Notes under the pieces: generated by a model | The model's input: only the letters and a program-made list of their open reading frames with translations | Databases searched by the model: none | Told to the model about the DNA's origin: nothing | Made by a program: the position numbers and the translations under genes | NCBI RefSeq assembly: GCF_023055435.1 | Contig: NW_025963857.1 | Location: 12,896,001 to 12,960,000 of the forward strand | Direction of reading: 5' to 3' | Source: Haliotis rufescens | Lineage: Eukaryota | DNA length: 64,000 nt | Shown: positions 1 through 62,336 of the stretch, piece by piece | Layout of the letters: each line of letters begins with the position of its first letter | Numbering within the stretch: the stretch's first letter is position 1

Positions 1-1171
1 GTTGTGCTTGTATAGGTCTGAGTCGATCCAGAAAACTGTCAAATACTTCTTTTTCTTCTTCGGAAGATTTTTAAGGAACTTACCAATTTCCTGACTTAAT
101 CTTCCTGGCATGAGCCTTTTCAGGTGCCGACGGATGTTGAGCGATTTTCCTATGTAGATTGTCTTGTGTTTATAGGCAATCTTATACACACCTTTCATTG
201 GCTGTTTGTCGGGAAGCTCATAGTATGGCATGTGATTTGATTGGAGGAGCTCGCATGGTGGTACCTGAGTAGAAGGAATATAACATACAATACAAGATAC
301 AAGATGCAAACAAAGTATACAGTACTATACGCCCATGTTTGATGGTGGCTAAAATGAAACAAACATAAAATGGTTATTCGATGGCGATGTATTTGATATG
401 GATCTCATAGTTGTGTTTTTGACCTTACGTCTGCTGTGTTTTTGATGACTGTTTTAGGCCTAGTAACGTTTTGATAATGTTTGTAATTTTGTCATCAAAG
501 CCAATTTTCCAGTGTATACTTTTCTTTTGTTGGGCATTTTACATAATTTTATCTACACCTATGCACATATTTTCATCCTTATAGTCCTTGTCATGGAATC
601 ATTTAAATGATGAAGTGAAGTTAAGACTTGTCATTGTTGCTTGGCATGCTGATGGCCGAAGTATATAAACACAAGCATTACTGAACAAATTCTAAAACCT
701 ATATATTACCTCCGTAACCCTGTCTATACTTTTATATTTTGGAAGCTTCATATTCTGAGATCCATGAACTTGACTATCCTGTGTTGATTTAGCCAGGCCC
801 ACATCATTTGGGATTTTGTCTGTATTGTCTGATCCCAAATCGCTGTGCATCTTTGTACCACTGGCTGTGGTTGTATCCTGTTCAGAGTTCCAGACTGGTG
901 CATCCAATCTGTCTGGAAAATCTTTTGTTTTTCTGGGTCGACTTGGGCCAAGTATGACAGGAAGTTCATCTTCTGAAGCAATTTCGGTGTCTGTTTCAAG
1001 AATTGGAAATGACTTTTGAAGGTTTGCGATTTTCCTGAGGTCTTCATGCTGAACTGGCAGACAGCCACAATAGCCGCATGCGTGCCCCTCAGTTTGTGGT
1101 ACATAATGGGCACATTGTCCACAGCTGCAGCTACCCCGAGGAACCCCACGCTTGTCTTTGACGTAGGACAT
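1..1171 (-). CDS. Cys-finger + GIY-YIG-like protein, paralog 1 (exon 1 1171-710, exon 2 264-<1; runs off the window edge)
   Basis: Exon 1 is MSYVKDKRGVPRGSCSCGQCAHY...CGYCGCLPVQH, ending at donor GAG|GTAATA (710/709). The acceptor CTCAG| precedes 264. Manual translation of exon 2, which is not in the ORF track: VPPCELLQSNHMPYYELPDKQPMKGVYKIAYKHKTIYIGKSLNIRRHLKRLMPGRLSQEIGKFLKNLPKKKKKYLTVFWIDSDLYKHN. The join is phase 0. Confidence 0.85.
330..495. repeat. Dispersed ~165-bp repeat in the paralog 1 intron; diverged inverted copy at ~24150-24309
   Basis: CGCCCATGTTTGATGGTG...ATGGTTATTCGATGG matches the reverse complement of 24150-24309. Confidence 0.6.
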
Positions 1172-1671
1172 CAGGAAGTCTCCAGCAACCTACATTATTG
1201 CAGAACATTTAGGCAGATCAATAGTTTTTCTCTTGCCATCCCGTATGTAATCAGTTCAACTATTTGTACTTGTTATGCAACAAACTGAATTTAATGTGTT
1301 TACATGCACATTTTCTCTTAAAGGCAATAATTATTTCCTAATTCTGTGGTATAACACTGGTACTCTTAAACAATAAATGACATATATATCTGAAACATCT
1401 CAAAACTTAACCATATTCAATGTACTTGTAAGTGCCCTGATAATTGTTAATGGTTTCTACAAACAAAGACAAATCTGACCTATATCAATATGTTCTAATT
1501 ATGGTACACATAAAGATAATTAGAATTGGCTTTTCGAAAGACGCAACCAACTTTCACTGGATCAGGTGGTTTAGTGCGAACTTAGGGCTGAATATCGGCC
1601 TTTGTGCAGGTTTAGATAAATCCTTGAAAACATACATATTTCTTTAGGAACTCCGAAAGGTGACGTTTTTG

Positions 1672-2025
1672 AGGTGAGGTGAAATGGGGTTCAAAGTCGC
1701 GTCCAAGATTATTGCACTTATATAGCGACGTGCATGTACGTGTGTGTGTGTGTGTGTGGCTGCTTGTACTAGTCTGGACTGATGCCGATCAGAGTGCTAG
1801 CACACTGAGATACCATGCCGCAGTTAAACATGAATACCCCACTTAGACATAGTATACTGACTCCGAGCCGACCAGTCTATGTTTTAGCCCCTTAATGCCG
1901 AGCACCAGACAGGGTAACAACAAGTACCATCTTTTAACGTCTTTTGGTATGACGCGGGCGGGGATCGAACCCCGGACCTTCCGGTCTCCGTGCGGACTCT
2001 ATACCACCAGACCACGGAGGCGGTC
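1672..2025 (-). mobile_element. tRNA-derived SINE, family D (partial copies at ~36503-36773, ~43690-43945, ~57433-57690)
   Basis: A-box-like GTGGTCTGGTGG and B-box GGTTCGATCCC are followed by a body AAAAGATGGTACTTGTTGTTACCCTG that recurs in the window. Confidence 0.7.
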
Positions 2026-2712: not shown

Positions 2713-2732
2713 CAATGACCTGCACAGTGGTT

Positions 2733-5050: not shown

Positions 5051-6263
5051 TTATTGGATATTGCACCACCATTTAGAAGTGTTTTTTTTGGGAAGTAGTC
5101 CATTGAATTTGGGTTTGGTCCCTTGCATGTCTTCAATACACTTCATATAACTTTTCTTTGGGCAATTGTGGACGTACATTGTTTCGTCCAGGTAATACAC
5201 TGTCACCTTCTCCAGGTCCCTCTGGCTCAGACTTTTGATAAACTCGAACAAATCGGATCGACCGTGGCCGCTGAAATGACTCTTCAGTGTTTGTTTGACA
5301 TTGCAGGAACCCGAGCCCACGTAGATCGTCTGCCAGTTATAGGCGATCTTGTACACTCCTCGGACAGAATATGGGATACGGTCCAGCTCGGTGAAGGGGA
5401 TGTGGCCCTTCTGTAGGACCTTGCAGGGCTTCAGCTTCAGCAGCCCCTAGAACAGATGGACAGAATGTGACCCAAGGTTGCATCACCTATTGCGATAAAA
5501 CAAACAGGAAATTATGTTTTCATACAGGACTTTTATACAGATCCAACCATACTTGAAACTTGATACACTGTGATACCCTGGCCTGATTGTCAAGTTTGAC
5601 CCGATTACAAGTATTAATACGCGTGAGTTGCGTTTAAGGAGAGTCTGAGCTCCATATGTCAAGCTGGGCTCTGGGACTGGTAATTTATTGTCGGAGTGGG
5701 TGAAAGTGCGTGTTTTATTTTGTTTCTGTCTTTGTTTTGGAGAGGGGGGGGGGGGGGGGGGGGGGGTGTCATCTGGAAAGTGGGGGTCATGAAACATACA
5801 GTCCTATGACCATTCCCTAGGAGTTAATATCAACAATACAGTTTGAAGATCATACCTCAATCCCAAGAGAATACGTGTACGTGTCTGCGTTTTGTCCAGT
5901 CGTTGTACCCTTCAGCTTTTTCTTTGCAGGTCCGGCGCTGACATCATCCAAAGCTCGTTTCTTGGAGTCAAATAGACTTCCTAAGTCGGATGATGACCAT
6001 GACGTTGTACCCAACAGTGGGAATGATGTTGTGCCTGATACAGCCTCAGAGGATGCAGTTGGCATCCCTGAATCACTAGAGGACTCAGAGACGTCAGCGT
6101 CATCGTCAACCACATCAACAGGACTGTTCCTCATGATGATGTGGTCAATGGGAGGACATCCACATTTGGCACAGTCCGTCGTTTCATTACTGTCAGGACT
6201 GATGTAGCTGTAGCAGTTCCGACATTTGCAGCCGAATTTGGTGTGGAGTCCTGATGTTTCCAT
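5051..6263 (-). CDS. Cys-finger + GIY-YIG-like protein, paralog 2 (exon 1 6263-5856, exon 2 5446-5051; ~267 aa, ends CNIQ)
   Basis: Exon 1 contains CKCRNCYSY...CAKCGCPPIDH and ends at donor GAG|GTATGA; acceptor TTCTAG|GGG. Exon 2 reads GLLKLKPCKVLQKGHIPFTELDRIPYSVRGVYKIAYNWQTIYVG...SYMKCIEDMQGTKPKFN...WWCNIQ*. Phase 0. Confidence 0.85.
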
Positions 6264-7157: not shown

Positions 7158-8119
7158 ATGCCACGCCTTTCAAATGTGCAACGTGAACGTGCCATCGGCA
7201 TGTTGCAGACGGGAACGTCCGTAGCTGAAGTCGCAAGGATGATGGGTTGTAGTCAACGGACTGTTTATGATTTACAGACGCGTCTACAGCAAACAGGTAC
7301 CATCGCTGATCGCCCTCGGCCAGGTTGACCACGTGTGACGTCACATGCAGAGGATCGTCAGATTGTCTTACGTCACCTCCGTAACCGATTTTTGACGGCT
7401 ACATCAACCAGAATGAACTGTTTAGGGGTAGACTGAGTGCGCAAACTGTTCGAAACCGTCTGAGAACTGCTCACCTTCAAGCACGACGGCCATACTGCGG
7501 GCCGATTCTGACTCAATTACACAGACAATGTGTCAATTGTGGGCACAGCGACACTTACGATGGACTCAGAGGAATTGGAATCAAGTCGTCTTCAGTGATG
7601 AATCCCGATTTAATCTTTGATTTGCTGATGGTAGGGCGTGGGTGTGGAGACGCCGTCATGAACGTTACGCCCAGTGTTGTGTACAAGAAGTTGACAGATT
7701 TCGAGGCGGAAGTGTCATGGTGTGGGGTGCTTTCTGTGGCAATGCACGTTCCAGGCTTCCAGGTACTGGCACCAGAACTTCTGCCTTTTATGGCAGCACA
7801 TGGACCTGGTTTGATCTTCCAACACGACAATGCCAGACCCCACAAAGCAATTTTGACAAGGAATTTCCTTCAGAATGCGGGAGTCAAAGTCATGGACTGG
7901 CCGTCTCCCGACCTCAATCCCATCGAACACGTCTGGGATGCTCTTGGCAGAAGTCTGCGCACTCTCCAGAACCAACCACAGAATTTGCAAGATATTGGCA
8001 CCATTTTGCAGCAACAATGGCGTCGTCTTCCCAATCATGTGTTCACAAGCATCACAAGGTTCATGCGGAGGCGTTGTGTGGCAGTTGTCAACGCACATGG
8101 TGGCCATACCCGCTACTGA
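7158..8119 (+). mobile_element. Decayed Tc1-like transposase
   Basis: MPRLSNVQRERAIGML HTH start, FSDESRF, GGSVMVWG, FQHDNARPH, SPDLNPIEHVW, GGHTRY*; carries stops and frameshifts. Absent from duplicate copy B. Confidence 0.9.
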
Positions 8120-8171
8120 ACTTGTGTGCCATCAGATTCTCGTGCTTGGGACTTATGATTTAAACTGTTGA

Positions 8172-14854: not shown

Positions 14855-16118
14855 TTATTGGATATTGCACCACCATTTAGAAGTGTTTTTTTTGGGAAGT
14901 GGTCCATTGAATTTGGGTTTGGTCCCTTGCAAGTCTTCAATACACTTCATATAACTTTTCTTTGAGCAATTATGGTCGTACATTGTTTCGTCCAGGTAAT
15001 ACACTGTCACCTTCTCCAGGTCCTTCTGGCTCAGACTTTTGATAAACTCGAACAAATCGGATCGACCGTGGCCGCTGAAATGACTCTTCAGTGTTTGTTT
15101 GACTTTGCAGGAACTTGAGCCCACGTAGATCGTCTGCCAGTTATAGGCGATCTTGTACACTCCTCGGACATAATTTGGGATATGGTCCAGCTCGGTGAAG
15201 GGGATCTGGCCCTTCTGTAGGACCTTGCAGGGCTTCAGCTTCAGCAGCCCCTAGAACAGATGAACAGAATGTGACCAAAGGTTGCATCACCTGTTGCGAT
15301 AAAACAAACAGGATTTTGATGTCATACAGGACTTTTAATCAGATTGAGATCCAACCATACTTGAAACGTGTTGTCGTGATACACCGTGATACCCTGGCCT
15401 GATTGTCAAGTTTGACCCGATTACAAGTATTAACACGTTTCACTTTCATTGAATTGGTTATTGCTGGCGTGAGTTGCGTTTAAGGAGAGTCTGAGCTCCA
15501 TATGTCAAGCTGGGCTCTGGGACTGGTAGTTTATTATCGGGGTGGGTGAGATTGCCTGTTTAATTTTGTTTCTGTCTTTTTTTGTGGAGGAGAGGGGGTG
15601 GGGGGTGAGGGGTGGGGTGGGTGGGGTGCAGGGGTGTTACCTGGGTGGTGGGGGCATGAAACATACAGTCCTATGACCATTCACTAGGAGTTAATAATAA
15701 CAATACAGTTTGAAGATCATACCTCAATCCCAAGAGAATCCGTGCCTGCTTTTTGTCCAGTCGTTGTACCCTTAGGCTTTTTGTTTGCAGGTCCGCCACT
15801 GACATCATCCAAGGCTCGTTTCTTGGTGTCAAATAGACTTCCAAAGTCGGATGATGACCATGCCGTTGTACCCAACAGTGGGAATGATGTTATGCCTGAT
15901 ACAGCCTCAGAGGATGCAGTTGGCATCCCTGAATCACACGTGGGCTCAGAGACGTCATCGTTATCCACCTCAATAGGGCTGATCCTCATGATGGTGTGGT
16001 CAATGGGAGAACATCCACACTTAGCACAGTCCGTCGTTTCATTGCTGTCCGGACTGGTGTAGCTGTAGCAGTTCTGACATTTGCAGCCGAATTTGGTGTG
16101 GAGTCCTGATGTTTCCAT
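14855..16118 (-). CDS. Cys-finger + GIY-YIG-like protein, paralog 3 (exon 1 16118-15723, exon 2 15250-14855; ~263 aa, ends CNIQ)
   Basis: Duplicate of paralog 2 with the same splice sites and intact frames. Confidence 0.85.
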
Positions 16119-16872: not shown

Positions 16873-17019
16873 NNNNNNNNNNNNNNNNNNNNNNNNNNNN
16901 NNNNNNNNNNNNNNNNNNNNNNNNNNNNNNNNNNNNNNNNNNNNNNNNNNNNNNNNNNNNNNNNNNNNNNNNNNNNNNNNNNNNNNNNNNNNNNNNNNNN
17001 NNNNNNNNNNNNNNNNNNN
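16873..17019. other. Assembly gap
   Basis: Run of N. Confidence 1.
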
Positions 17020-30684: not shown

Positions 30685-33600
30685 CTACTGACCATCGTTT
30701 GGAGTTACAAATGGGTTCATCATATTCAAAACTTTCGAGCCAAAGGTCTTGAGCACTGAGAATACCCCAACACCTTGCGTTGAATCTGTGCCTTTCTTAA
30801 GCAATTGTCGTGCCCTGATTTTACGTGTTTCTCCGGATGTTTTGTTTCTAACTTTTGTCTGAGAGTGTTGGATTGAAGAATATGTTTGCGTACTGGAGAC
30901 AATGGACTCACAAACCAAAGTCTTTCCAGTATGGGAGCCTCGGCCTTTGTACTGTGGATTCTTGGTTTTACAGCTTCTACCTTCACCAGGCGTTTTTGTC
31001 TGACCAAGAAAGTTTGGTGGGTTCTGCTGGGTTGGTGCAGCCTTTAACATTCTCTCCAACAGTTTGGACACATTTAGTTCTGGTTTCTGGTTTACAGCAT
31101 TAGGCGTGATCACAGACGGTTTGTTTGCAAAACTGTTATCGGAAATTGATTCGGAAGACACTGGAGTCATTTTCTTGTTCTTAGTAGGGTCATTTCCACT
31201 TGTTGTTGATACTTTCTGTTCTTGATCTGAATAGACATTGCCCCTCGTTCTCTTCTCAGGCTGCATAAGCTCATATCGAGGTGTTATTTTTGTGTGTTGA
31301 GAATGTGCAGAACCGACAGTGTGTTTCTGGCCCTTCTCTGCAGAGGATGGTTCGAAACAAGGGGATCCTGTCTGTGAATGTTTCCCTAGAACCGTTGAGT
31401 GATCTCTTAATGTCTCTTTACTGGGAGATTTACATTTTCTTCTGATGCTCTGTCGTTGTAGCTTCTTTGGGGAATATTTATTTACCTGTATTGTGGTAGG
31501 ACAGGCAGGTTGGTACTCTTTAGTGACAGTTGAAAGTGTCGCATCTACTCTTTTATCTTTTCTAATGATGTTCGTTGGTACAGCATGTCCAGTCACTTTC
31601 CACATATTATCATTTTCGGTCCTGGCTTCAAATTCTGGTGACCGGGGAGAAATACCTAACTGCTGAAGCACATCATGGGTTGTCTGATTTTCATGAAAGT
31701 TTTGAAGGTTCATTGACTTATCTTCAGAAGCTCGTATTGGTTGAGATCTTTGTCCGGATGAGACGGCCAAGGCTGGTATTGTAGAAACATTGCTCAGTGA
31801 CATCTCAGTTATTTTCATATTCAAGTTCATTACTGTACTCGGCACTGTGGCTGAAGAAGATAAGGTTGTTTGACGTCGACAGATGGGAATGTCCTTGGGA
31901 CTCTTTGTCGGAAGATGCCTTGACAGTTGTCCATGTTGATCATACTTTATTTTCTTTGCATCTGTATGAAACTGTGATTTCTCTCCATCATCACAGGCAG
32001 GTCTCTTTCTCGGCATCAAGCTGAATGTAGGTGCACTATGATCATCTAATGGGCTATATCTGTCAGCATCTTCAATATGATGGCTAGGTAGGATAGATAC
32101 ATGCTGTGATTGTTCTCTATCATCTTTTGAAGTTTTGGAATCATTATTGATAACTGTCACGCCGGCATTTGTCATCGAGCAGAGAATCGGTTGTATGTCG
32201 TTAAGCATTGGTTTCTTTCCCTGCAGGTCTTTGATACATTCCAGGTAGGACCTTCCACAGTGATGGACATGTATGCTCTCATTAAGCCAGAACACTGACA
32301 CCATCTCAAGTTCCTCCTTGGTAAGATTCAGCAAGAACTTTACTATCTCCTGCTTGCCATCACCACTGAACTGTTTCCGAAGCTCCTTGATGATATTGCT
32401 TGTTGGCGAACTGACATAGACAGTTTCCCACTTGTAGGCTATCTTGTACACACCACTTGGCCTGCGCGTCGTCCGCACGATGACTGAGTATGGTACATGA
32501 CCTCTGTGCAACAGCTTGCATGGTTTCATCTGGAATAAAAAGCAGTATTTTGGTAACACCTCAATACAAGTCAGTAAGCCAGCCAGTAAAACATTATGAG
32601 TGAGTGGGTGAGTTTGGTTCAACACCGATTTGAACAGTATTCCTGTCTTATCACGGCGTGTCAGTTTGACATGGGAGGAAAGCCCGAAGTGATGCAGGTC
32701 TTGGATGTTTACGAATTTGACAATCCTAGAAACATAATCAGGAGAATCTAGATTCAAACCCACGATCATAGTTTTCTGGCACGCTTAAGGAATTTCAGCG
32801 CCTTAGGCGACTATGACATAGACAAGCGGCACATTGTTGGTGTTCATGACGAGTTGATGACGAAATGAAATCAATGGGAAATTAACTAATATTGTTCATG
32901 AAACATTCCTATTACTTCTTGGGGCACGGGTGGCCTAGTCGTCTAAGGCGCCGCGATTCGCTGTGCAGCAGAGTTGCGTCCATTGGGCACGCCAGAAACC
33001 TATGATTGTGGGTTCGAATCCCGGTTCGCCCCGATTATGTTTCTAGGTTTGTCATCACCATTCCCGAGCTTGTGGGTTTCTCCGAAGTGGTAAACGTCTG
33101 AGTCCTGCATCACTTCGGGCTTTCCTCCCACATTAAGCCGAGACGCCGCGATATAACTGTCACTCAACTCACTCACTCAGTCACTCCTATTACTTCGTTA
33201 CGCCGAAGGCCCGGTTCGATTCCCCATATGGGTCCAATGTGTGAATCCCATTTCCGTTGTTCCCCGTCGTGATATATTGCTGGAATATTGCTAAAAGTGG
33301 CGTAAAGCCATACCACTTCATTCATTAAAACTACTTACGGCAATCAAGGGTATCGACATGCGGACTGTTTTTGGCACCATAGCCTGTTTGTCTTGTTTTC
33401 TATTCAATGGCCGCTCTGTCTTCGAAGATCTCTCTGTGTCCATATCTTGTCCTTTATTAATGCACGGTGTCTGGAAGTCCTTTAAACGTTCACACTCTTG
33501 TTTGGTATTTGTTTCAGGTTGCGACGTAACGTCATCAGAAGCACTAGCTTTCAGCCCCAGTGCTGTCTCAGCAGTTCCCTGTTCGTCCTGGCAATGCAAT

Positions 33601-36824: not shown

Positions 36825-37199
36825 GCACTAAATGGCTCATACAAAATTGCCGAGAATGGTCGGACAATATATGTGGTCAATGCCAAAATTGCATCAATCA
36901 GAAGAGCACTGAGGAAACATTTCAAAGGAATAGACAAACAACACATAGGAACATATCTAAGCATCCTACACGAAGCATACAAAGAGGAATTTATAACAGT
37001 GTTTTGGCTTGATATTAACATTAAACATGCCTGTAATTGTAGCTACCTTAAGTGTTTTGAAAGAATGGAAGGAAGAAAGCCACTGTACAACATGCAGGGC
37101 CATGCCTTCATCGCGCGACCAAAGCGAGTCGGTTCTTGTTCTGAATCTGGCCCAGATGATCACAAAATGGATACTCATGAAATCGAAAAATCGGAGTAA
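36825..37199 (+). pseudogene. 5'-deleted GIY-YIG-like paralog 5 (exon 2 remnant only)
   Basis: Nearly identical to ~46192-46566 but joined directly to sequence homologous to ~44340. Exon 1 and the acceptor are missing, and YVG has become YVV. Confidence 0.8.
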
Positions 37200-38039: not shown

Positions 38040-39182
38040 ATGGCAAAGTTCACGGACTTCAACCGAGACAAGTACGGAGTTGTTCGGGGTAGGTGTCGAG
38101 ACTGCCCCGAGGACTGTCCTCAGTATTCCCTACCTGTCCTCAGACACAACTGTACATATTGCGGGTGTCCGGCGGGTCAGCATGAGAGGGTGGAACCTCG
38201 ACCTGAACTCATCATCAAGATTGAACCAGGGGAGGAGGGGGCAGGATCTCCGGGGCGGCCTGTTGGAAGATCACAACCTGGTCTGTCGAGAAAACAGGAC
38301 GGGCTGCCTACAGCTCAAGCCCAACCTCGTTCCTCCAGGCGAAATAAGACGCCAATTGTTTCACGAAAACATCCGGATACATCGGGAGCAGTAACCCAGG
38401 TATAATTTCAGTTTAATTAGTTCTTGAGCTTTTGAATGTTTTTAGAAGTTCTTTGTTATTCTTGATTATCTTCGTTTCATCTAACCTTATGGCTACTACT
38501 GTGTGACCACAAGTGATCGAGGGCAAACGTTATTAATTTATGTTTAATCTCAGCTGCAAACGAGGCTTTGAACATAGCACATATTTACGTCGGTTATTTG
38601 TTGTCATACTAAATGGTGTTTTCCCCAAACCCCTCCACCACAAGATATTTAGTAGTTGGTCTCTTAGACATTAGATGCTGAGTATTTATACTTAGGTTTG
38701 TGCAATTAAATATTGAGTTTGGTTGATTAAACGAATTTTCATAACTAACCTTTTTAAATTTTACTTGTATATTTCAGAAACGTTGTGAGACGTTATTTGA
38801 GGATACTGGCGTCAATGTTTCTCTTCTTAAAAGAAACCTTAGAAAAACACAACGTGGCGTGTTCACAATCCTATGGAAGGGATATATAATTTATGTTGGT
38901 GAGCCAAAGAAAACGCCCATATTATCAAGCCTCCGTAGTATCTTTGCTGGTAGAAGCAACCAAGACATCAGCACATTTTTGAAAAGTCTACCCAAAGATT
39001 TGAAAAAGAAGCACATCAGATTCGCCTGGCTGAAACGCATGGATGACGACCCACATCGCCAAACTTGTGGCAAAGGCAAGAAAAAGGTGGTCTCGTACCG
39101 ACAGTGTATTTCAAAACTGCAAGGGAAGACTCCAAAGGATATCCTCAGGTATTACATGAGTGGACAAAACATCAGGCGATAG
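38040..39182 (+). CDS. Cys-finger + GIY-YIG-like protein, paralog 6 (exon 1 38040-38399, exon 2 38778-39182; ~254 aa)
   Basis: TTTCAG|ACATGG; CRDCPEDCPQY...CTYCGCPAGQH; donor CAG|GTATAA; acceptor TTTCAG|AAA. Exon 2 reads KRCETLF...RGVFTILWKGYIIYVG...SYRQCISKLQGKTP. Phase 0. Confidence 0.85.
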
Positions 39183-44357: not shown

Positions 44358-44500
44358 NNNNNNNNNNNNNNNNNNNNNNNNNNNNNNNNNNNNNNNNNNN
44401 NNNNNNNNNNNNNNNNNNNNNNNNNNNNNNNNNNNNNNNNNNNNNNNNNNNNNNNNNNNNNNNNNNNNNNNNNNNNNNNNNNNNNNNNNNNNNNNNNNNN
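44358..44500. other. Assembly gap
   Basis: Run of N; the equivalent U3 region (~58090-58185) holds a (GT)n tract. Confidence 1.
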
Positions 44501-45282: not shown

Positions 45283-46566
45283 ATGTCATTCATCGGGCGA
45301 GGAGGATGTCGCCACTGTGGATGTAGAGAATATGTGAAGCCACCAGAGGGAGAGAAATGTTACCACTGCAACCACGAGATGGACCTTCACGTCGTCAAAT
45401 ATCAACCACAACCAACTGGTGGGACACCAACCAGCAAGACCGGTGAATCATCTGTTCAGAACACAATGGATGCTGCCACGGTGGATGTTAGTCTGATGCA
45501 CACGGGAGAGGCGTTTGAACAAGGAGCCCCTGACGTATGTTTCGAAGAGACGTGGGAAGTCCGCGCACCGTCTGACTTGGCGCATGGAGATTTCGTCAAG
45601 CCCCATGATAGAGGTGCAGTCATCACAAAGCGAGTATCACCAATGACAGGAAAGGATGGAAATATCGGATCTAGTGAAGGTAATAGTCACTCTACTGCAG
45701 CACCAAGATCAATAGATGCGAAGCCAGACAAAGAACAGTTAAGTTCAGTTCTTAAACGAACAGCGTCTGAGATCAGTACCACAAAGAGGACACCGATAAA
45801 GGCATCCAATGTGTTCGTAGCTCCAGCACCTTACAATGGACCGGTATGTATTGGTACTTTGTAATAGATGTTTTTATGACATATCATACAAAAGCTATAA
45901 AGCTTCGACGTGTGATGATAATCTTTGAAGATGATGATCATGGTGTTGGTGGTGGATATATGATGTTTGATGATGATGAAGATGATGAAAAAAATACTAT
46001 TTTGTTTCGGAATACTTTTTTGAGGACCTTTCAAGTGATGAGTCCTTAATTCGGAGCCAACACTGTGAATCATCTTGCCCAGTCACCAAAACATGTCTTG
46101 GTCATAAACACAGTGTTTGCTTTGTTTGTAGAAACCATCTTGCTGGCGTCTTAGAATGAGCCATCTTGCCTACGGAACTGAACCCTCAGAAGCACTAAAT
46201 GGCTCATACAAAATTGCCGAGAATGGTCGGACAATCTATGTGGGCAATGCCGAAAGTGCATCAATCAGAAGAGCACTGAGGAGACATTTCAAAGGAATGG
46301 ACAAACAACACATTGGAGCATATCTAAGCACCCTACACGAAGAATACAAAGAGGAATTTATAACAGTGTTTTGGCTTGATATTACCATCAAACATGCCTG
46401 TAATTGTAGCTACCTTAAGTGTTTTGAAAGAATGGAAGGAAGAAAGCCACTGTACAACATGCAGGGCCATGCCTTCATCGCGCGACCAAAGCGAGTCGGT
46501 TCTTGTTCTGAATCTGGCCCAGATGATCACAAAATGGATACTCATGAAATCGAAAAATCGGAGTAA
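45283..46566 (+). CDS. Cys-finger + GIY-YIG-like protein, paralog 7 (exon 1 45283-45843, exon 2 46132-46566; ~331 aa)
   Basis: GRGGCRHCGCREY...CYHCNHEMDLH; donor CCG|GTATGT; acceptor TTGTAG|AAA. Exon 2 reads KPSCWRLRMSH...GSYKIAENGRTIYVG...HACNCSYLKCFERMEGRKPLYN. Confidence 0.85.
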
Positions 46567-47171: not shown

Positions 47172-47341
47172 GGGGCGGTCGGGTAGCCTAGTGGTTTAAG
47201 CGTTCGCTCGTCACGCCGAAGACCCGGGTTCGATTCCCGACATGGGTACAATGTGCGAAGCCCATTTCTTATGTCCCCCGCCGTGATATTGCTGGAATAT
47301 TGCTAAAAGCGGCGTAAAGCCATACTCACTCACTCACTCAT
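47172..47341 (+). mobile_element. SINE family A with 13-bp TSD CATGATTGGGAAC (same insertion at 60832-61001; empty site near 37767)
   Basis: TSD visible on both sides; U1 lacks the insertion. Confidence 0.9.
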
Positions 47342-47609
47342 TCATGATTGGGAACAGGCCACAGGCAGTTATCGCCATAACATTGCTGACTGGTTGAAAC
47401 AGCATTTTACTCGGTTACATTTCTAAATGACAATATTGTTTGTGGTAAATTTAAGTATTAATGTTATTTGTTGTTTAAAGCTGCATTCAGCCCAGTTATA
47501 GTCCAGCTACATGATGGCGGCTTTTTTAAAACTGTTTTTTTTCTGTACTATTCCGAGTCGTGCTGTCTAACAAATAGCAAAACCTATTGTATTTGTTCAC
47601 GTTTCAGAC

Positions 47610-48641
47610 ATGGCAATTTTCACGGACATCAACCGAGACAAGTACGGAGTTGTTCGGGGTAGGTGTCGAGACTGCCCCGAGGACTGTCCTCAGTATTCCC
47701 TACCTGTCCTCAGACACAACTGTACATATTGCGGGTGTCCGGCGGGTCATCATGAGAGGGTGGAACCTCGACCTGAACTCATCATCAAGATGGAACCAGG
47801 GGAGGAGGGGGCAGGATCTCCGGGGCGGAGTGATGACCGACCACCACCCGGTCCGTCGAGAAGAGCCCAGCCAAGTACCCCCAGGCGAAATGAGTCGCCC
47901 ACTGGCTCACGAAATCACCAGGATACATCACGCACAGTAATCCAGGTATCATTTCAACCCGTTAACTTAGAAAGTTTTAGAAGTTAGTTTGTCATTCGTG
48001 AGGTTTCATTTTAATGTAACCTTTCCTATATGGCTTATATTGTGTAAGCATCAGTGATGGATGGAGGACATGATTTACTAACGTTTGATCTTAGCTGCGA
48101 CCGAGGCTTTGAACATAAGCACGTGCATACGTACGTTATTTGTTGTTACACCACAAACCTATGGAATGGGGGATGAAATTGACTTGATTGAACAGGTTTC
48201 TATCAGCTGCACTTTTAATATTTAACTTGTATGTTTCAGAAACGTTGTAAGACGTTATTTGAGGATGCTGGCGTCACATATTCTTATCTTCAAGAGAAAC
48301 TTACAAAAACTCAACGCGGCGTGTTTACAATCCTATGGAAGGGAAAAATAATTTATGTTGGGGAGCCAAAGAAGACGCCCCTATTAACTAACCTTCGTAG
48401 TATCTTTACTGGTGGAAGCACTCAAGATATCGGCAAATGTTTGAAAAGTTTACCCAACGATTTGAAAGAGAAGCATGTCCGAATCGCTTGGCTGACACAC
48501 ATGGATGACGACCCACACTGCCAAACGTGCAGAGAAGGCAAGAAAACGCTGCTTTCGTATCGACAGTGTGTTTCAAAACTGCAAAGCAAGAATCCAAGGG
48601 AGGTCCTCTTGGATCTCAAGACAAAATTTTCACGCCATTAG
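47610..48641 (+). CDS. Cys-finger + GIY-YIG-like protein, paralog 8 (exon 1 47610-47945, exon 2 48240-48641; ~245 aa)
   Basis: Same architecture as paralog 6; donor CAG|GTATCA, acceptor TTTCAG|AAA; intact frames. Confidence 0.85.
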
Positions 48642-51865: not shown

Positions 51866-52907
51866 TTAATGCAAGGTTATGTTTTTTACTAAATCTGAAA
51901 CAATTTCGGTTTGCAACAGATAAAGGACTCCTGTAAGTTCAAATGGTTTAATTTGCCATACTGACTTCAGAAAATGCGTGATTTCATAAAAAAAACCATG
52001 AACATGCACGATGCAAGCAACACATCTTCGTCTCATGGAATGGACCAGGCGTCGCACAAAGTCCTGTGGGATATCTGTCCATATCTGCTGGAGCATGTTT
52101 CGAAGTTCCTGGAGTGTCTGTGGAACACGTGGTTGACGTCGAAGGCGCCGATCCATCTCATCCAACATGTGCTCGGTTGGTGAGAGATCAGGGGAGCGAG
52201 CTGGCCAGGGGATGACATTCGCGTTGTTTTTGTTGAAGAGAATCCTGAACAAGTCGAGCAATTGAGGCCGGGCGTTGTCATGTTGAAAGGTAATGCCTGA
52301 GCCATGACGACGCAAAAACGATAGAACAACAGGGCCGAAGATCTGGTCGCAGTAGCACCGTCCATTGAGATTTCCCTCTACCACTATCAAACGGGTCCTC
52401 TGTCTTGCTGTAATCACACCCCATACCATAACTCTGCCGCCCCCGAACCGATCTTCTTCCATGCCACAATGATTGACGTAACGTTCACCTCGACGTCGGT
52501 ACACTCGAATCCGTCCATCGCTGTGGCTGAGGGGAAAACGAGACTCGTCAGTGAATAGAACTTGTCCCCACTGAATGGCCGTCCAGCGTAGACGCTGTCT
52601 GCACCACTGTAGACGAGCTTGAAAGATATTCTTCGAAGGCCAGGGATGCTTCTTGCAGTCACTGTTGCTGGCTGGAATCGATTTCGTAGGTGTGTTGTTC
52701 GAATCCAGTTGTCTGTCGATTATTGGTTACGCGTGGCCTGCCACTCCGAGGATGGTCTCTGACTACATTCGTCTGTTGCCAACGTTGCCATAAACACCAA
52801 ATGGTGTTTCTGTGGATGTTAAATTGTCTTACAACATCACGTTGACTCGATCCTGCTTCAAGCATACCAATGGCTCGCAGACGCTCATTTTGGGACAGGC
52901 GTGGCAT
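51866..52907 (-). mobile_element. Decayed Tc1-like transposase
   Basis: MPRLSQNERLRAIGML, RSGRPRVT, GGGRVMVWG, FQHDNARP, WPARSPDLSPTEH, SMRRRC; frameshifted. Confidence 0.9.
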
Positions 52908-55035: not shown

Positions 55036-56640
55036 TGACATGGTCACAGAGTGTTCCATCTCGACAACACAACCATGGAGTGTTCCACCTTGAGAACACA
55101 ACCATGGCATGTTCCACCTTGACAACGTGACCATGGAGTGTTCCACCTTGACAACAGGACCATAGAGTGTTCAATCTTGACAACATAACGTAGGTCTGTT
55201 CACAACATGACCTAGGTCTCTGTTTCACCTTGACAACATGACCATGGAGTGAACAGGTTTCACAACACGACCATAGAGTGCTCCATCTTGACAACATGAC
55301 CTAGGTCTGTTCCACCTTCACAACATGACCTTGGTCTGTTCCACCTTCACAACGCGACCATGGAGTGTTTCACCTTGACAACATGACCTACGTCTGTTCC
55401 ACCTTCATACACTACCTGGGCCTGTTCCACCTTGACAACATGACCATGGAGGGTTCCACCTTGACAACACGACCCTAGAGGGTTTCATCTTGACAACATG
55501 ACCTAGGTCTGTTCAACCTTCACAACATGACCTTGGTCTGTTCCACCTTGACAATGCGACCATGGAGTGTTCCACCTTGACAACAAGACCCTAGAGGGTT
55601 TCATCTTGACAACATGACCTAGGTCTGTTCAACCTTCACAACACGACCTAGGCCTGTTCCAACTTGACAACATGACAATCGAGTGAACACGTTTCACAAC
55701 ACGACCCTAGAGTGTGCCATCTTGACAACACGACCATGGCATGTTCCACCTTCACAACATGACCTTGGTCTGTTCCACCTTGACAACATGACCTTTGTCT
55801 GTTCCACCTTGACAACGTGTCCATGGAGTGTTCCACCTTGACAACGTGTCCATGGAGTGTTCCACCTTGACAACGTGACCATGGAGTGTTCCACCTTGAC
55901 AACGTGACCATGGAGTGTTCCACCTTGACAACGTGACCATGGAGTGTTCCACCTTGACAACGTGACCATGGAGTGTTCCACCTTGACAACGTGACCATGG
56001 AGTGTTCCACCTTGACAACGTGACCATGGAGTGTTCCACCTTGACAACACGACCATGGAGTGTTCCAACTTGACAACATGACCATGTAGTGTTCCACTTT
56101 GACAACGTGACCATGGAGTGTTCCACCTTGACAACACGACCTTGGTCTGTTTCATCTTGACAACACGACCATGGAGCGAACGCGTTTCACAACACGACCA
56201 TGGAGTGTTCCGCTTTGACAACACTACCATGGAGTGTTCTACTTTGACAACACTACCATGGAGTGTTTCACAACATGAACATGGAGCGAACACGTTTCAC
56301 AACACAACAATGGTGTGTTCTACTTTGACAACACTACCATGGAGTGGACACATTTAACAACACGACCATGGAGTGAACACGTTTCACAACACGACCATGG
56401 AGTGAATACGTTTCACAACACGTCCATCGAGTGAACACGTTTCACAACACGACCATGGAGTGAACATGTTTCACAACATGACCATCGAGTGAATACGTTT
56501 CACAACACGACCATGGAGTGAACACGTTTCACAACACGACCATGGAGTCAACACGTTTCACAACACGACCATGGAGTCAACACGTTTCACAACACGACTA
56601 TGGCATGTATCAACCTAACAACATGACTATCATGTGTACC
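55036..56640. repeat. 29-bp minisatellite (GTTCCACCTTGACAACGTGACCATGGAGT and variants)
   Basis: 29-bp periodicity with a homogeneous core at ~55800-56050. Confidence 0.95.
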
Positions 56641-57843
56641 ATCTTCACAATACAATCTTGTAATTTCCACCTTGACAACACTTCACATATTTCACATAAT
56701 CAGGGCGTGTAGTCTATAGGCAATGAATGAATCATTGCATTAAATAAACAGCAGATATTCAACAAGATGGCTGTCAATATTAACGAAAATTTACAGAAAA
56801 TATGCATAACAGAAATTTCTTGGGACATACAGCAATGTACAGATGACATTCTCAAATGCTTCATACACAGCTACCCAGTGGTAGACATTAAAACAAACAA
56901 GAGCCTTATAATTGTCAAAACATTCTCGTGAATTCCTATGGATTAAAATCAGTTAGATGTATCTTTAGTACACACATAAAATAGAACTATTCACGAGTTT
57001 CATAAAATTGGTATTACACGACTGCAGTATCTGAAAATGAAGAGAGTCTCTGGGCTCCCCTTTATTATATTTTTATTAAGATAATTGAACAACTGTTTTT
57101 TCTGTACGATATGTTCATTTCAGAGACAAGATGTTAGTCTAAATGCTCTGTATCAGGGCGTGTGTCGTGGCGCACACAAATAGGTGTTTTCCCAACCATA
57201 ACATGAAATAATTATATTACTTTAACTTTTGTCTGTCCAAATTATATGGTCAAGATAATTTCGTTTTTATTTTGAGGCTTTTAACCACACCTATTGAGGA
57301 TTAATTATTTATGTCTTATATTAATGGCGGGTTATGAGTTACTAAACTCAGTATAGTCCTGTATCTGTATAAAATACTCAGCTAACCTTGGCGATGTGAG
57401 ATATTCCCCTTTTTGTTTGTCAAAACACTTGCCACCTGCCTCCGTGGTGGATAGAGCGTCTGCCCGGAGACGGAAGGTCGGTGTTCGATCCCGTTAAAAG
57501 ATGGTACTTGTTGTTATCCTGACTGGCACTCTGTGGGCTAGCGCACTATTATACGGCATTAGTCCGGACTAGTACAAGCGCGCGCACGCACGCACACACA
57601 CATGCACGCACACCCACGCACATATGCATACGTGTCGCTTTAGATAATCGCAATAGTCTTGAATGCGACGTTCAAACCCCCATCAACTAAACACAAGTCT
57701 TGCAACATCTCCATGCATACACGCACGATCGGCGTTTTTTCCTCGACCCTTATATCACAGGGTGGCTGTGGTTGACGGCATACCTCCGTTGAAGACTGAA
57801 TGAGTTATCGTTATGCAGGGCTGCACTACTAAGAATTTATCAC

Positions 57844-57867
57844 AACGAAAGTGAAAATAGATTTCCC
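57844..57867 (+). promoter_or_regulatory. IRF-element/ISRE-like motif (U3 copy)
   Basis: AACGAAAGTGAAAATAGATTTCCC. Confidence 0.4.
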
Positions 57868-58095: not shown

Positions 58096-58137
<42 letters not shown>

Positions 58138-58958: not shown

Positions 58959-60243
58959 ATGTCATTCATCGGGCGAGGAGGATGTCGCCACTGTGGATGT
59001 AGAGAATACGTGAAGCCACCAGAGGGAGAGAAATGTTACCACTGCAACCACGAGATGGACCTTCACGTCGTCAAATATCAACCACAACCAACTGTTGGGA
59101 CACCAACCAGCAAGACCGGTGAATCATCTGTTCAGAACACAATGGATGCTGCCACGGTGGATGTTAGTCTGATGCACACGGGAGAGGCGTTTGAACAAGG
59201 AGCCCCTGACGTATGTTTCGAAGAGACGTGGGAAGTCCGCGCACCGTCTGACTTGGCGCATGGAGATTTCGTCAAGCCCCATGATAGAGGTGCAGTCATC
59301 ACAAAGCGAGTATCACCAATGACAGGAAAGGATGGAGATATCGGATCTAGTGAAGGTAAAAGTCATTCTACTGCAGCACCAAGATCAATAGATGCGAAGC
59401 CAGACAAAGAACAGTTAAGTCCAGTTCCTAAACGAACAGCGTCTGAGATCAGTACCCCAAAGAGGACACCGATAAAGGCATCCAATGTGTTCGTAGCTCC
59501 AGCACCTTACAATGGACCGGTATGTATTGGTACTTTGTAATAGATGTTTTTATGACATATCATACAAAAGCTATAAAGCTTCGACGTGTGATGATAAACT
59601 TTGAAGATGATGATCATGGTGTTGGTGGTGGATATATGATGTTTGATGATGATGAAGATGATGAAAAAAATACTATTTTTTTTCGGAATACTTTTTTGAA
59701 GACCTTTCAAGTTGATGAGTCCTTAATTCGGAGCCAACACTGTGAATCATCTTGCCCAGTCACCCAAACATGTCTTGGTCATAAACACAGTGTTTGCTTT
59801 GTTTGTAGAAACCATCTTGCTGGCGTCTTAGAATGAGCCATCTTGCCTACGGAACTGAACCCTCAGAAGCACTAAATGGCTCATACAAAATTGCCGAGAA
59901 TGGTCGGACAATCTATGTGGGCAATGCCGAAAGTGCATCAATCAGAAGAGCACTGAGGAGACATTTCAAAGGAATGGACAAACAACACATTGGAGCATAT
60001 CTAAGCACCCTACACGAAGAATACAAAGAGGAATTTATAACAGTGTTTTGGCTTGATATTACCATCAAACATGCCTGTAATTGCAGCTACCTTAAGTGTT
60101 TTGAAAGAATGGAAGGAAGAAAGCCAATGTACAACATGCAGGGCCATGCCTTCATCGCGCGACCAAAGCGAGTCGGTTCTTGTTCTGAATCTGGCCCAGA
60201 TGATCACAAAATGGATACTCATGAAATCAAAAAATCGGAGTAA
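58959..60243 (+). CDS. Cys-finger + GIY-YIG-like protein, paralog 9 (exon 1 58959-59519, exon 2 59809-60243; ~331 aa)
   Basis: Near-identical to paralog 7, with the same splice sites. Confidence 0.85.
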
Positions 60244-61269
60244 AGGATACTTTGCGAACATTTTGAATTTGAAACGGGCAAATGTATTCTCATTTGCATA
60301 AGTTGTGGTTAAATTACTGTTTCTTTGTCTCACCTATTATTTTCATATGACTTGGTTGAGCTGAATAAAGATATCGTCAAAAGGAAGATTAACTTCGTTA
60401 TTATTGTGGTCATATATTTGACATGGCATCAAAAGGGTTGTCGTCACGTTTACTGACATTTTTGGTTATTAATATAGCCAGTCAGCTTATCAGAGTGAGT
60501 GAGTGAATTGAGTTAAACGTCGCTTTTAGCAATATCACGGCGATTGACACCAGAAATAGGCTCCACACATTGTACCCATGTGGGGAATCGAACAAAGAGC
60601 TTCAACGTGACGAGCGAACGACAGACCATTTGTATTGGTTTAAAAGACAGGTTATTGTTTTGGTCACTTATTATTATATAAAAAATATCCTGTCTCGAAC
60701 ACTTACGAAAGGTGAGGGATAAGGGTGTTATATTGTGTAACATTGGTGATTTCGTCATGGCAGTCATATTGTGTGATTCATTATGCATGCTGTTGTCCAT
60801 TAGTTTGTCTTGACCTGGCATGATTGGGAACGGGGCGGTCGGGTAGCCTAGTGGTTAAAGCGTTCGCTCGTCACGCCGAAGACCCGGGTTCGATTCCCGA
60901 CATGGGAAGAATGTACGAAGCCCATTTCTGGTGTCCCCCGCCGTGATATTGCTGGAATATTGCTAAAAGCGGCGTAAAGCCATACTCACTCACTCACTCA
61001 TTCATGATTGGGAACAGGCCACAGGCAGTTATCGCCATAACATTGCTGACTGGTTGAAACAGCATTTTACTCGGTTACATTTCTAAATGACAATATTGTT
61101 TGTGGTAAATTTAAGTATTAATGTTATTTGTTGTTCAAAGCTGCATTCAGCCCAGTTATAGTCCAGCTACATGATGGCGGCTTTTTTAAAACTGTTTTTT
61201 TTCTGTACGATTCCGAGTCGAGCTGTCTAACAAATAGCAAAACCTATTGTATTTGTTCACGTTTCAGAC

Positions 61270-62336
61270 ATGGCAATGTTCACGGACATCAACCGAGACA
61301 AGAGAGGAGTTGTTCGGGGTAGGTGTCGAGACTGCCCCGAGGAATGTTCTCAGTATTCCCAGCCTGTCCTCAGACACAACTGTACATATTGCGGGTGTCC
61401 GGCGGCTCATCATGAGAGGGTGGAACCTCGACCTGAACTCATCATCAAGATAGAACCAGGGAAGGAGGGGGCAGGATCTCCGGGGCGGAGTGATGACCGA
61501 CCACCACGCCGTCCGTCGAGAAGACCGGACGGGTGGTCCAAGGCCCAAGTCCAGCCAAGTACCTCCAGGCGAAATGAGTCGCCCACTGATTCACGACATC
61601 ACCAGTATACATCACGTACAGTAATCCAGGTATTATTTCAACCCGTTAACTTAGCTCTTTAGCTTTAGAAAGTTTTAGAAGTTAGTTTGTCATTCGTGAG
61701 GTTTCATTTTAATGTAACCTTTCCTATATGGCTTATATTGTGTAAGCATCAGTGATGGATGGAGAACATGATTAACTAACGTTTGATCTTAGCTGCGACC
61801 GAGGCTTTGAACATAAGCACGTGCATACGTACGTTATTTGTTGTTACACCACAAACCTATGGAATGGGGGATGAAATTGACTTGATTGAACAGGTTTCTA
61901 TCAGCTGCACTTTTAATATTTAACTTTAATGTTTCAGAAACGTTGTAAGACGTTATTTGTGGATGCTGGCGTCACATATTCTCATCTTCAAGAGAAACTT
62001 ACAAAAACTCAACGCGGCGTGTTCACAATTAAGTGGGAGGGAAAAATAATTTATGTTGGGGAGCCAAAAAAGACGCCCCTATTAACTAACCTTCGTGGTA
62101 TCTTTACTGGTGGAAGCCAACAAGACATCAGCAAGTATTTGAAAAGTTTATCCAACGATTTGAAAGAGAAGCATGTCCGAATCGCTTGGCTGACACACGT
62201 GGATGACGACCCACACTGCAAAACGTGCAGAGAAGGCAAGAGAAAGCTTTCGTATCGACATTGTGTTTCAAATCTGCAAAGCAAGGATCCAAGGAAGGTC
62301 CTCTTGGATCTCAAGAGAAATTTTTCACTCCATTAG
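61270..62336 (+). CDS. Cys-finger + GIY-YIG-like protein, paralog 10 (exon 1 61270-61629, exon 2 61938-62336; ~252 aa)
   Basis: Same architecture as paralogs 6 and 8; intact frames and GT-AG sites. Confidence 0.85.

What the first reader, a model, noticed from the sequence alone, without database searches (positions are those of the whole stretch)
1..62336. Expanded, rapidly diversifying cluster of intron-containing Cys-finger + GIY-YIG-like genes
Seen: ten loci share an exon-2 domain with the pattern C-x-(L)...G(V/S)(Y/F)xI-x6-(I/V)Y(V/I)G...F-x-G...(V/I)x(V/F/I)x(W/Y)(L/I)...H-x(1-3)-C...SYxxC...(Q/E)xKxP. Nine have a phase-0 intron just before this domain, and eight have an N-terminal Cys/His finger with a disordered linker. 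They form at least five divergent subtypes (1; 2/3; 4; 5/7/9; 6/8/10). Established: G(I/V)Y-x(9-11)-Y(I/V)G defines GIY-YIG nucleases, which in animals are mainly SLX1, ANKLE1 and Penelope-like element endonucleases. None of those has this architecture, and the genes carry no RT or TIRs of their own. Inference: a lineage-specific host gene family under birth-and-death evolution, of the kind often seen in immunity, genome-defence or germline conflict systems. I do not recognise a named family with this architecture.
Basis: partly seen in the sequence, partly recalled or inferred. Interest (0 to 1): 0.92.

Follow-up and report, generated by a model that had tools for sequence, protein, structure and literature searches.

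The report
Abalone zinc-finger plus dead-nuclease gene cluster
Red abalone carries a 386-kb tandem cluster of expressed, spliced genes that join a cysteine finger to a GIY-YIG nuclease fold lacking key catalytic residues, so it is probably a fast-evolving abalone-only family of binding proteins rather than DNA cutters.

Summary
The window (Haliotis rufescens, contig C79) has ten loci with the shared domain. Nine have a GT..AG phase-0 intron just before it, and eight have an N-terminal Cys/His finger. Locus 5 is a 5'-truncated fragment. Both assembly gaps are intergenic.

The ten loci are part of 49 domain copies in one 386-kb cluster. They are not dispersed and have no reverse transcriptase. 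Spliced contigs from four runs in four studies confirm two introns, and RefSeq models use the same junction.

The domain is a GIY-YIG fold. The family profile hits UvrC at E=5e-5. The seven best structural matches are all GIY-YIG proteins (Z 8.1 to 4.6), then Z drops to 3.7.

Every cluster type lacks the catalytic Arg, and most also lack the Glu. A small stand-alone family in molluscs and amphioxus, with five copies in this genome, keeps Arg, His, Glu and Asn without exception. I therefore read the cluster as an abalone-specific, probably non-catalytic offshoot.

Evolution is fast. dN/dS is about 0.55-0.9 between old paralogs and about 1 or more between young ones. Type 8/10 exons differ 3-4 times more than their intron. 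All reading frames stay open.

The biological role is untested. The finger's relatives remain unknown.

The parts
710..1171 (-). Locus 1 (type 1) exon 1: finger plus disordered linker
   Evidence: ORF. The donor GT follows codon 154, phase 0. The finger is aligned.
1..264 (-). Locus 1 exon 2: start of the GIY-YIG-like domain. It runs off the window start into a long disordered tail.
   Evidence: Acceptor AG at 266-265. The open frame is 793 aa in the genome. The tail ORF is in L032. The H. rubra orthologue P0008 has the same junction.
5856..6263 (-). Locus 2 (type 2) exon 1: finger plus linker
5051..5446 (-). Locus 2 exon 2: GIY-YIG-like domain, ending in a CaaX-like CNIQ
   Evidence: The junction agrees with H. 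asinina P0002.
15723..16118 (-). Locus 3 (type 2 paralog) exon 1
14855..15250 (-). Locus 3 exon 2
30685..32529 (-). Locus 4 (type 4): domain exon followed by a disordered tail of about 500 aa. No finger exon was found.
   Evidence: Acceptor AG at 32531-32530, phase 0. ORF. RefSeq type 4 models P0003 and P0004 also lack a finger.
36825..37199 (+). Locus 5: 5'-truncated fragment of a type 7 exon 2, likely a pseudogene piece
   Evidence: It matches bases 61-432 of the type 7 exon 2 at 96.8%. There is no polypyrimidine tract or exon 1 upstream. The YVG glycine is changed.
38040..38399 (+). Locus 6 (type 6) exon 1: finger plus linker
38778..39182 (+). Locus 6 exon 2
   Evidence: 378-nt GT..AG intron
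45283..45843 (+). Locus 7 (type 7) exon 1: finger plus linker
   Evidence: The spliced joint 45843|46132 is seen in four runs. RefSeq P0001 has the same junction.
46132..46566 (+). Locus 7 exon 2: GIY-YIG-fold domain. This is the sequence that was modelled.
   Evidence: AlphaFold2 mean pLDDT 80.3. Fold matches.
47610..47945 (+). Locus 8 (type 8) exon 1
   Evidence: The joint 47945|48240 is seen in four runs.
48240..48641 (+). Locus 8 exon 2
58959..59519 (+). Locus 9 (type 7 paralog) exon 1
   Evidence: 98.6% identical to locus 7 exon 1
59809..60243 (+). Locus 9 exon 2
   Evidence: 99.3% identical to locus 7 exon 2
61270..61629 (+). Locus 10 (type 10) exon 1
61938..62336 (+). Locus 10 exon 2
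16873..17019 (.). Assembly gap, intergenic, upstream of locus 3
44358..44500 (.). Assembly gap, intergenic, upstream of locus 7

Best explanation
This is a Haliotis-specific, tandemly amplified host gene family. Each full gene encodes three parts: an N-terminal Cys/His finger (seven invariant columns, six Cys/His plus one Tyr; probably zinc-binding), a disordered Ser/Pro/Arg/Lys-rich linker, and, after a phase-0 intron, a domain of about 110 residues with the GIY-YIG nuclease fold. Types 1 and 4 add disordered tails of 500-1000 residues.

The domain descends from a small stand-alone canonical GIY-YIG enzyme family that still exists in abalone, bivalves and amphioxus. In the cluster genes the catalytic Arg is gone in every type. 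The metal-binding Glu is gone in types 1-5, 7 and 9. It is also gone in window locus 6, although the type 6-like H. asinina protein P0006 keeps it. Types 6, 8 and 10 lack the His and the Asn.

My reading is that these proteins bind something, most likely nucleic acid, rather than cut it. The finger would act as a second binding or targeting module.

The family grows and changes in four ways: tandem and inverted segmental duplication, truncation, recombination inside the conserved intron that re-pairs finger exons with domain exons, and unusually fast change of the coding exons.

Shown here: gene structure, splicing, expression as RNA contigs, fold, residue losses, cluster layout and substitution patterns.
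Inferred: loss of nuclease activity, zinc binding, nucleic-acid binding, and any role in conflict or reproduction.
For: Organism and gene models: RefSeq proteins of Haliotis rufescens on a contig of the same length as C79 reproduce my splice junction.

Splicing: GT..AG joints 45843|46132 and 47945|48240 occur in contigs of four runs from four studies and three organism labels.

Cluster: there are 49 domain matches within C79:12,879,709-13,265,811 on both strands and only six elsewhere. The finger profile hits only inside the cluster, 27 times, even at E<=1.

Fold:
- The family profile hits UvrC at E=5e-5, and also T4 EndoII and I-TevI.
- Pfam GIY-YIG PF01541 matches 12 of 24 members, best E=1.9e-8.
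- The model has mean pLDDT 80.3.
- The seven best of 48,161 chains are all GIY-YIG folds: EndoII Z 8.1, AtGRXS16 N-domain 7.4, UvrC 6.5, Eco29kI 5.9, I-TevI 5.7, Hpy188I 5.0, PD-T4-3 4.6. The next chain scores 3.7.

Residue loss:
- R, H, E and N are invariant in the small proteins, both in the 17-sequence alignment and in all 12 foreign and 5 own-genome small copies tabulated.
- Every cluster type has A, T, E, H, Q, N, S or C at the Arg column.
- That Arg column aligns to UvrC R39.
- R, H, E and N are the residues implicated in GIY-YIG catalysis (PMC8557442, citing Van Roey 2002).
- Glu-to-Ala or Glu-to-Gln variants are the mutants that were crystallised. Eco29kI E142Q is labelled inactive in its PDB title.

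Still under constraint:
- All 11 type 6/8/10 genes I hold have open exons and GT..AG introns, although intron divergence reaches 0.40.
- The finger ligand columns are invariant across types.
- Orthologues of types 1, 2, 4, 7 and 8 exist in H. asinina, H. rubra and H. cracherodii.
Against: No assay was done. Type 7 has other arginines one and two residues from the lost Arg, and glutamates later on the same helix, so a shifted active site cannot be excluded. R.Hpy188I is a known GIY-YIG enzyme with an unusual active site (PMC2630997, title).

The Glu column was placed by multiple alignment and helix position only. HMMER alignments to solved structures covered just the N-terminal half.

The finger model failed (pLDDT 52), so zinc binding and the finger's fold are unconfirmed.

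dN/dS near 1 among young copies is also what relaxed constraint would give.
Confidence: 0.68

Rival explanations
1. The proteins are still active GIY-YIG nucleases with a non-canonical active site. The finger targets them to a substrate, for example in defence against foreign DNA.
For: The fold is intact and both Tyr motifs are kept in most types. Types 8 and 10 keep the Glu column. Type 7 keeps His and Asn and has neighbouring arginines. Dunin-Horkawicz et al. report that the Asn motif is absent in the active Slx1 family and replaced by Asp in COG1833 (PMC1564403).
Against: The Arg is replaced by seven different residues across types. That pattern looks like release from constraint rather than a new conserved solution. 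No type keeps all four of R, H, E and N, while every small relative does.
Confidence: 0.15
2. The loci are remnants of, or were domesticated from, a Penelope-like retroelement endonuclease or another mobile element.
For: Penelope-like endonucleases are GIY-YIG domains with upstream Cys motifs and are abundant in invertebrates (PMC8557442). The weak Pfam hit is to a second GIY-YIG model. Tc1/mariner remnants lie in the window.
Against: [quoted passage not shown] No RT domain appears in the larger window ORFs scanned or in the L031 tail. The copies are confined to one cluster. The genes have spliced introns. The nearest relatives are small cellular proteins.
Confidence: 0.04
3. The array is mostly neutral: transcribed but functionless duplicates that are decaying.
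For: dN/dS is about 1 among young paralogs. There are 11 truncated type 5 fragments, and two type 4 copies have an in-frame TAG. The catalytic residues are lost.
Against: All 11 type 6/8/10 genes held have open frames and intact splice sites at intron divergence up to 0.40, and their indels are multiples of three. dN/dS is 0.55-0.9 for old pairs. The finger ligand columns are invariant. The same types and the same chimeric isoform occur in H. asinina.
Confidence: 0.1

Closest known systems
Small stand-alone metazoan GIY-YIG proteins (90-170 aa). Examples: Haliotis cracherodii XP_071088857.1 'uvrABC system protein C-like'; Crassostrea and Tegillarca 'GIY-YIG domain-containing protein'; a Branchiostoma protein.
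   Same: Clear sequence homology to the cluster domain (profile E 1e-17 to 1e-4). Same length, same secondary-structure order, and shared Cys positions around the last helix. Five copies sit elsewhere in this same genome.
   Different: They have no finger, no linker and no tail. They keep R, H, E and N without exception. Some have a hydrophobic, signal-like N-terminus.
UvrC N-terminal domain, T4 EndoII and I-TevI catalytic domain (GIY-YIG superfamily, Pfam PF01541)
   Same: Same fold (Z 8.1 to 5.7). The GIY and YIG strands and the following helix align.
   Different: The catalytic Arg, and in most types the Glu, are missing. The partner domains differ. The genes are animal genes with an intron.
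Penelope-like element endonuclease (cd10442)
   Same: A GIY-YIG domain in animals that sometimes has an upstream Cys-rich linker (PMC8557442).
   Different: There is no CCHH motif inside the GIY-YIG core, no RT and no dispersal. The finger is separated from the domain by 60-150 disordered residues and an intron.
SLX1 and ANKLE1
   Same: They are animal GIY-YIG proteins with extra domains.
   Different: No RING/PHD, ankyrin or LEM domain was found by Pfam. The finger is N-terminal, not C-terminal.
Testin/LMCD1 N-terminal cysteine-rich domain (lead from note s1-813739)
   Same: From my memory only, the Cys/aromatic/His spacing of the type 6/8/10 finger is the same.
   Different: Not tested. No Pfam or PDB model matched. 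The finger profile hit nothing outside the cluster, including the contigs that carry the three PET exons of this genome.

Membership tests
GIY-YIG superfamily (fold and homology) | Beta-strand motifs GIY and YIG about 10 residues apart | tested here: met
   G-x-Y/F and Y-V/I-G are present in loci 1-3 and 6-10. Locus 4 has YVS and locus 5 has YVV.
GIY-YIG superfamily (fold and homology) | Significant profile or structural similarity to solved GIY-YIG domains | tested here: met
   UvrC E=5e-5. Pfam PF01541 best E=1.9e-8 among family members. The top seven structural matches are all GIY-YIG, Z 8.1-4.6, and the next is 3.7.
GIY-YIG nucleases (active enzymes) | Catalytic Arg on the helix after YIG (UvrC R39 position) | tested here: not met
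   The column holds A, T, E, H, Q, N, S or C in all cluster types and R in all 17 small relatives tabulated.
GIY-YIG nucleases (active enzymes) | Metal-binding Glu at the start of the last helix | tested here: not met
   The column holds K, G, R, N or a gap in types 1-5, 7 and 9, and K in window locus 6. Glu is kept only in types 8 and 10 and in H. asinina P0006. It is invariant in the small relatives. The column was placed by alignment, not by a solved complex.
GIY-YIG nucleases (active enzymes) | Conserved Asn after the last helix | tested here: inconclusive
   Kept in loci 2, 3, 4, 5, 7 and 9. Lost in the type 1 relatives (L031, P0008) and in loci 6, 8 and 10. Window locus 1 is cut off before this column. 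The motif is dispensable in Slx1 (PMC1564403).
Penelope-like element endonuclease | CCHH motif with two Cys between GIY and YIG | tested here: not met
   No Cys lies between the two motifs in any type. Criterion from PMC8557442.
Penelope-like element endonuclease | Linked reverse transcriptase and dispersed copies | tested here: not met
   No RT appears in the larger window ORFs scanned or in the L031 tail. 49 of 55 genome matches lie in one cluster.
SLX1 | C-terminal RING/PHD-type finger after the GIY-YIG domain | tested here: not met
   The finger is N-terminal and there is no RING/PHD Pfam match.
ANKLE1/LEM-3 | Ankyrin repeats and a LEM domain | tested here: not met
   No such Pfam match.
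Testin/LMCD1 cysteine-rich domain | Sequence homology of the finger to that domain | not testable with these tools
   No reference sequence could be obtained from a tool. Only the recalled spacing agrees.

The most novel reading that the evidence does not exclude
An abalone-specific family of dead GIY-YIG nucleases fused to a new zinc finger acts in a genetic conflict. It might be a DNA or RNA sensor, a decoy, or a germline chromatin factor. In this reading the coding exons are kept hypervariable while the introns stay conserved, as in conotoxin or venom gene families, and recombination in the intron re-pairs finger and domain modules to make new combinations.
Probability: 0.2. Interest if true: 0.75.

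Novelty: new variant of a known kind. Interest (0 to 1): 0.52.

Why it matters
It gives a concrete case of a nuclease fold being recruited, disarmed and massively amplified in one animal lineage. The likely ancestor, the small canonical enzyme, is still present in the same genome for direct comparison.

In one subtype the exons are significantly more divergent than their own intron and the exon forms are re-paired between paralogs. This pattern is usually tied to toxin, immune or reproductive genes, and abalone is a classic system for fast-evolving reproductive proteins.

The genes are currently annotated only as 'uncharacterized', or misnamed from their low-complexity tails. This analysis supplies a domain assignment and a testable prediction: they bind but do not cut.

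Tried and rejected
- Pfam on single exon peptides gave only a sub-threshold GIY_YIG_2 hit (E=0.012) and nothing for the finger.
- The AlphaFold2 model of the finger, from an 8-sequence alignment, was unusable (mean pLDDT 52). I did not search with it.
- The finger profile against PDB sequences gave only insignificant zinc-ribbon hits (S27ae E=0.08).
- Both ESM Atlas calls on the finger scored under 0.9, so they are leads only.
- The search for homologous proteins on the finger returned only Haliotis proteins of the same subtype.
- Foldseek alone was weak (best E=0.011), although its 13 best rows were all GIY-YIG.
- PF20815 found nothing in this genome.
- HMMER alignments to solved GIY-YIG chains stopped before the Glu and Asn. 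Those two columns therefore rest on the family alignment.
- The transposon reading was rejected; see the rival explanations.
I hold 258 of 414 kb around the cluster.
- Exons were searched and analysed one by one, by reference, and dN/dS was computed per exon. Spliced proteins were used only as returned by the databases.


Full report
WHAT IS THERE

The window is Haliotis rufescens (red abalone), contig C79:12,896,001-12,960,000. RefSeq proteins of that species, on a contig of the same length, match the loci.

Eight start with a Cys/His finger. Its invariant columns are C, C, C, Y, C, C and H. The spacing in types 6/8/10 is C-x2-C-x3-C-x2-Y-x8-C-x2-C-x-C-x4-H.

A disordered linker of 60-150 residues follows the finger. 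A canonical GT..AG phase-0 intron of 285-470 bp comes next, and then the shared domain.
- I read the splice sites directly for loci 1, 4, 7 and 8.
- I read them by script for loci 2, 3, 6 and 10 and for seven more genes of the cluster.
- For locus 9 they are inferred from 98-99% identity to locus 7.

Locus 4 has the intron but no finger exon. The RefSeq models of its orthologues also lack one. Locus 5 is a fragment. It starts at residue 21 of a type 7 exon 2, with no acceptor context and no exon 1.

The two assembly gaps are intergenic, 755 and 783 bp upstream of the start codons of loci 3 and 7. The sequence on both sides of each gap stays collinear with the paralogous tandem unit. I did not fill them.

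EXPRESSION AND SPLICING

Contigs of four public runs, from four studies and three organism labels, skip exactly 45843|46132 and 47945|48240 with GT..AG ends. One 1189-nt contig spans both exons of locus 7. The runs are only guessed to be RNA, but a contig that lacks a canonical intron is what RNA gives. RefSeq protein P0001 has the same junction.

NOT A TRANSPOSON

The domain profile finds 55 places in the 1.33-Gb genome. Of these, 49 lie within C79:12,879,709-13,265,811, a span of 386 kb, on both strands. By type they are:
- 2 of type 1
- 2 of type 2/3
- 11 of type 4
- 11 type 5 fragments
- 4 of type 6
- 6 of type 7
- 13 of type 8/10

The recurring units are [type 4 reverse, type 5 fragment, type 6 or 8] and [type 7, type 8/10].

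The finger profile hits only inside this cluster, 27 times, even at E<=1. None of the larger window ORFs scanned, nor the L031 tail, has a reverse transcriptase. The only transposon traces are two Tc1/mariner DDE remnants.

The mark of Penelope-like endonucleases, two cysteines between GIY and YIG (PMC8557442), is absent.

THE DOMAIN IS A GIY-YIG FOLD

Single peptides gave only a sub-threshold Pfam hit. A profile search of 1.84 billion representative proteins found just 32 relatives.

The finger-bearing relatives that carry a species name are all Haliotis: H. rufescens, H. cracherodii, H. asinina and H. rubra. Most of the rest are small stand-alone proteins of 90-170 residues. The named ones come from abalone, oysters, a blood clam and amphioxus.

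With these added, the evidence for the fold is:
- The family profile hits UvrC (E=5e-5), T4 EndoII and I-TevI.
- Pfam GIY-YIG matches 12 of 24 members, best E=1.9e-8.
- An AlphaFold2 model of locus 7 exon 2 has mean pLDDT 80.3.
- Against 48,161 solved chains, the seven best are all GIY-YIG folds (Z 8.1, 7.4, 6.5, 5.9, 5.7, 5.0, 4.6), and the next scores 3.7.

BUT THE ACTIVE SITE IS GONE

In the small proteins R, H, E and N are invariant. The five small copies elsewhere in this genome keep them too. These are the residues implicated in GIY-YIG catalysis (PMC8557442, citing Van Roey 2002). The R column aligns to UvrC R39.

In the cluster genes:
- The R column holds A, T, E, H, Q, N, S or C.
- The E column holds K, G, R, N or a gap in every type except 8 and 10. 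The type 6-like H. asinina protein P0006 also keeps E, but window locus 6 has K.
- Types 6, 8 and 10 in turn lack H and N.

No type keeps all four residues. The scatter of replacements looks like loss of constraint at these sites, not a new conserved solution. I therefore read the domain as a pseudo-nuclease, with about 70% confidence.

Two caveats apply. The Glu column rests on the family alignment and on its place at the start of the last helix. Type 7 also has spare arginines and glutamates nearby.

HOW THE FAMILY EVOLVES

In a maximum-likelihood tree the 17 canonical small proteins form one side of a branch (support 93/93). All cluster types sit on the other side on long branches. H. asinina sequences pair with types 2 and 6/8. 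The types therefore predate the split between those two species.

Within the window, tandem units are 92-98% identical.

Old paralog pairs (type 6 against type 8):
- intron divergence 0.40
- dS about 0.38
- dN/dS 0.55-0.7 for the domain exon and 0.6-0.9 for the finger-linker exon

Young pairs within type 8/10:
- dN/dS mostly 0.4-3.8 (one pair 5.3) for exon 1
- dN/dS 0.7-1.8 for exon 2

Types 2 and 3 give 0.71 and 1.4. All 11 type 6/8/10 genes I hold are open, with indels in multiples of three. Constraint is weak but real.

The most unusual pattern is between the two tandem units that carry loci 7-8 and 9-10.
- Locus 8/10 exons differ by 6.0% and 7.3%.
- Their intron differs by 1.7%.
- The locus 7 gene differs by 0.7-1.4%.
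- Other non-coding sequence differs by 2.4%.
- Exons against their own intron give Fisher p=6e-4. Exons against everything else give p=1e-10.

Synonymous change is raised as well. Two exon 1 forms (336 and 360 nt) and two exon 2 forms occur in all four combinations among paralogs. Recombination or gene conversion across the conserved intron is therefore part of the story. Positive selection is possible but not shown.

WHAT IT PROBABLY DOES

There is no signal peptide; the finger forms the N-terminus. Types 4, 8 and 10 are basic, with pI 9.6-9.9. I infer intracellular proteins that use a disarmed nuclease fold, and a finger on a flexible tether, to bind a ligand. Nucleic acid is the most likely ligand. 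The biological setting (defence, germline or other) is open. Run metadata were coded, so I could not place expression by tissue.

COMPARISON AND NOVELTY

The fold and superfamily are known, and the small canonical relatives are annotated. What is new is the finger-linker-domain architecture, the loss of catalytic residues, the restriction to Haliotis, the 49-copy cluster and the exon-biased divergence.

A full-text search for GIY-YIG together with Haliotis found no paper on this family. The finger has no detectable relatives.

LIMITS
- Only 258 of 414 kb around the cluster could be fetched.
- Exons were never joined for searches. Joined proteins were used only as returned by the databases.

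Noticed in passing
window 45679/45680 (internal donor in locus 7 exon 1) and 47607/47608 (acceptor 2 nt before the locus 8 start codon): RefSeq has a 385-aa read-through isoform (P0052, H. rufescens). It joins the type 7 finger and half its linker to a complete type 8/10 protein, giving two fingers and one domain. H. asinina has the same 385-aa form (P0050). GT and AG sites that fit this join, in phase 1, are present in the window.
   Followed up: partly
window 5051-5068 and 14855-14872 (minus strand): Types 2 and 3 end in C-N-I-Q. The H. asinina orthologue ends in C-N-V-Q. Two relatives end in the canonical CaaX boxes C-S-I-M (P0005) and C-A-I-L (P0023). Prenylation of some members is possible (lead from note s1-813760).
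   Followed up: partly
G000 C35:16.297-16.313 Mb (three copies), C594:5.470 Mb, C79:16.888 Mb (L033-L036): These are five small single-exon canonical GIY-YIG genes in the same genome, with all catalytic residues intact. They are the likely ancestral kind. Some foreign members (P0014, P0017) have a hydrophobic N-terminus that looks like a signal peptide.
   Followed up: partly
G000 C79:12.99-13.054 Mb versus 13.091-13.145 Mb: A block of about 65 kb holding eleven family members recurs at an offset of 91-100 kb, with near-identical scores. It is either a very recent segmental duplication or an assembly duplication. The copy number of 49 may be inflated.
   Followed up: no
L031:3719-7039 (upstream of the window) and window 30685-32169: Types 1 and 4 carry disordered tails of 500-1000 aa with tandem peptide repeats. 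RefSeq names the orthologues 'RBBP6-like' and 'NACA muscle-specific form-like', apparently from the low-complexity tails alone.
   Followed up: partly
window 25360-28507 and 55045-56680: There are two large minisatellites. The first has a period of about 30 bp and stays open in several frames, giving spurious ORFs of up to 594 aa.
   Followed up: no
window 46750-47460: A very high-copy repeat lies between loci 7 and 8. Summed contig depth reaches 1.8 million in the RNA-like runs, with many rearranged joints. It is probably a SINE-like element.
   Followed up: no
window 7595-8163 and 51866-52504: Tc1/mariner DDE transposase remnants (Pfam DDE_3, just below the cut-off). The first is present in the locus 2 unit but not in the aligned part of the locus 3 unit.
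   Followed up: partly
L037 (G000 C112:17,815,925-17,816,701): A divergent single copy of the domain on another contig. It keeps the Arg, lacks the Glu, and has a disordered tail. Its gene context was not resolved. Other first-reader notes report tandem vWA plus GIY-YIG-derived families elsewhere in this genome.
   Followed up: no
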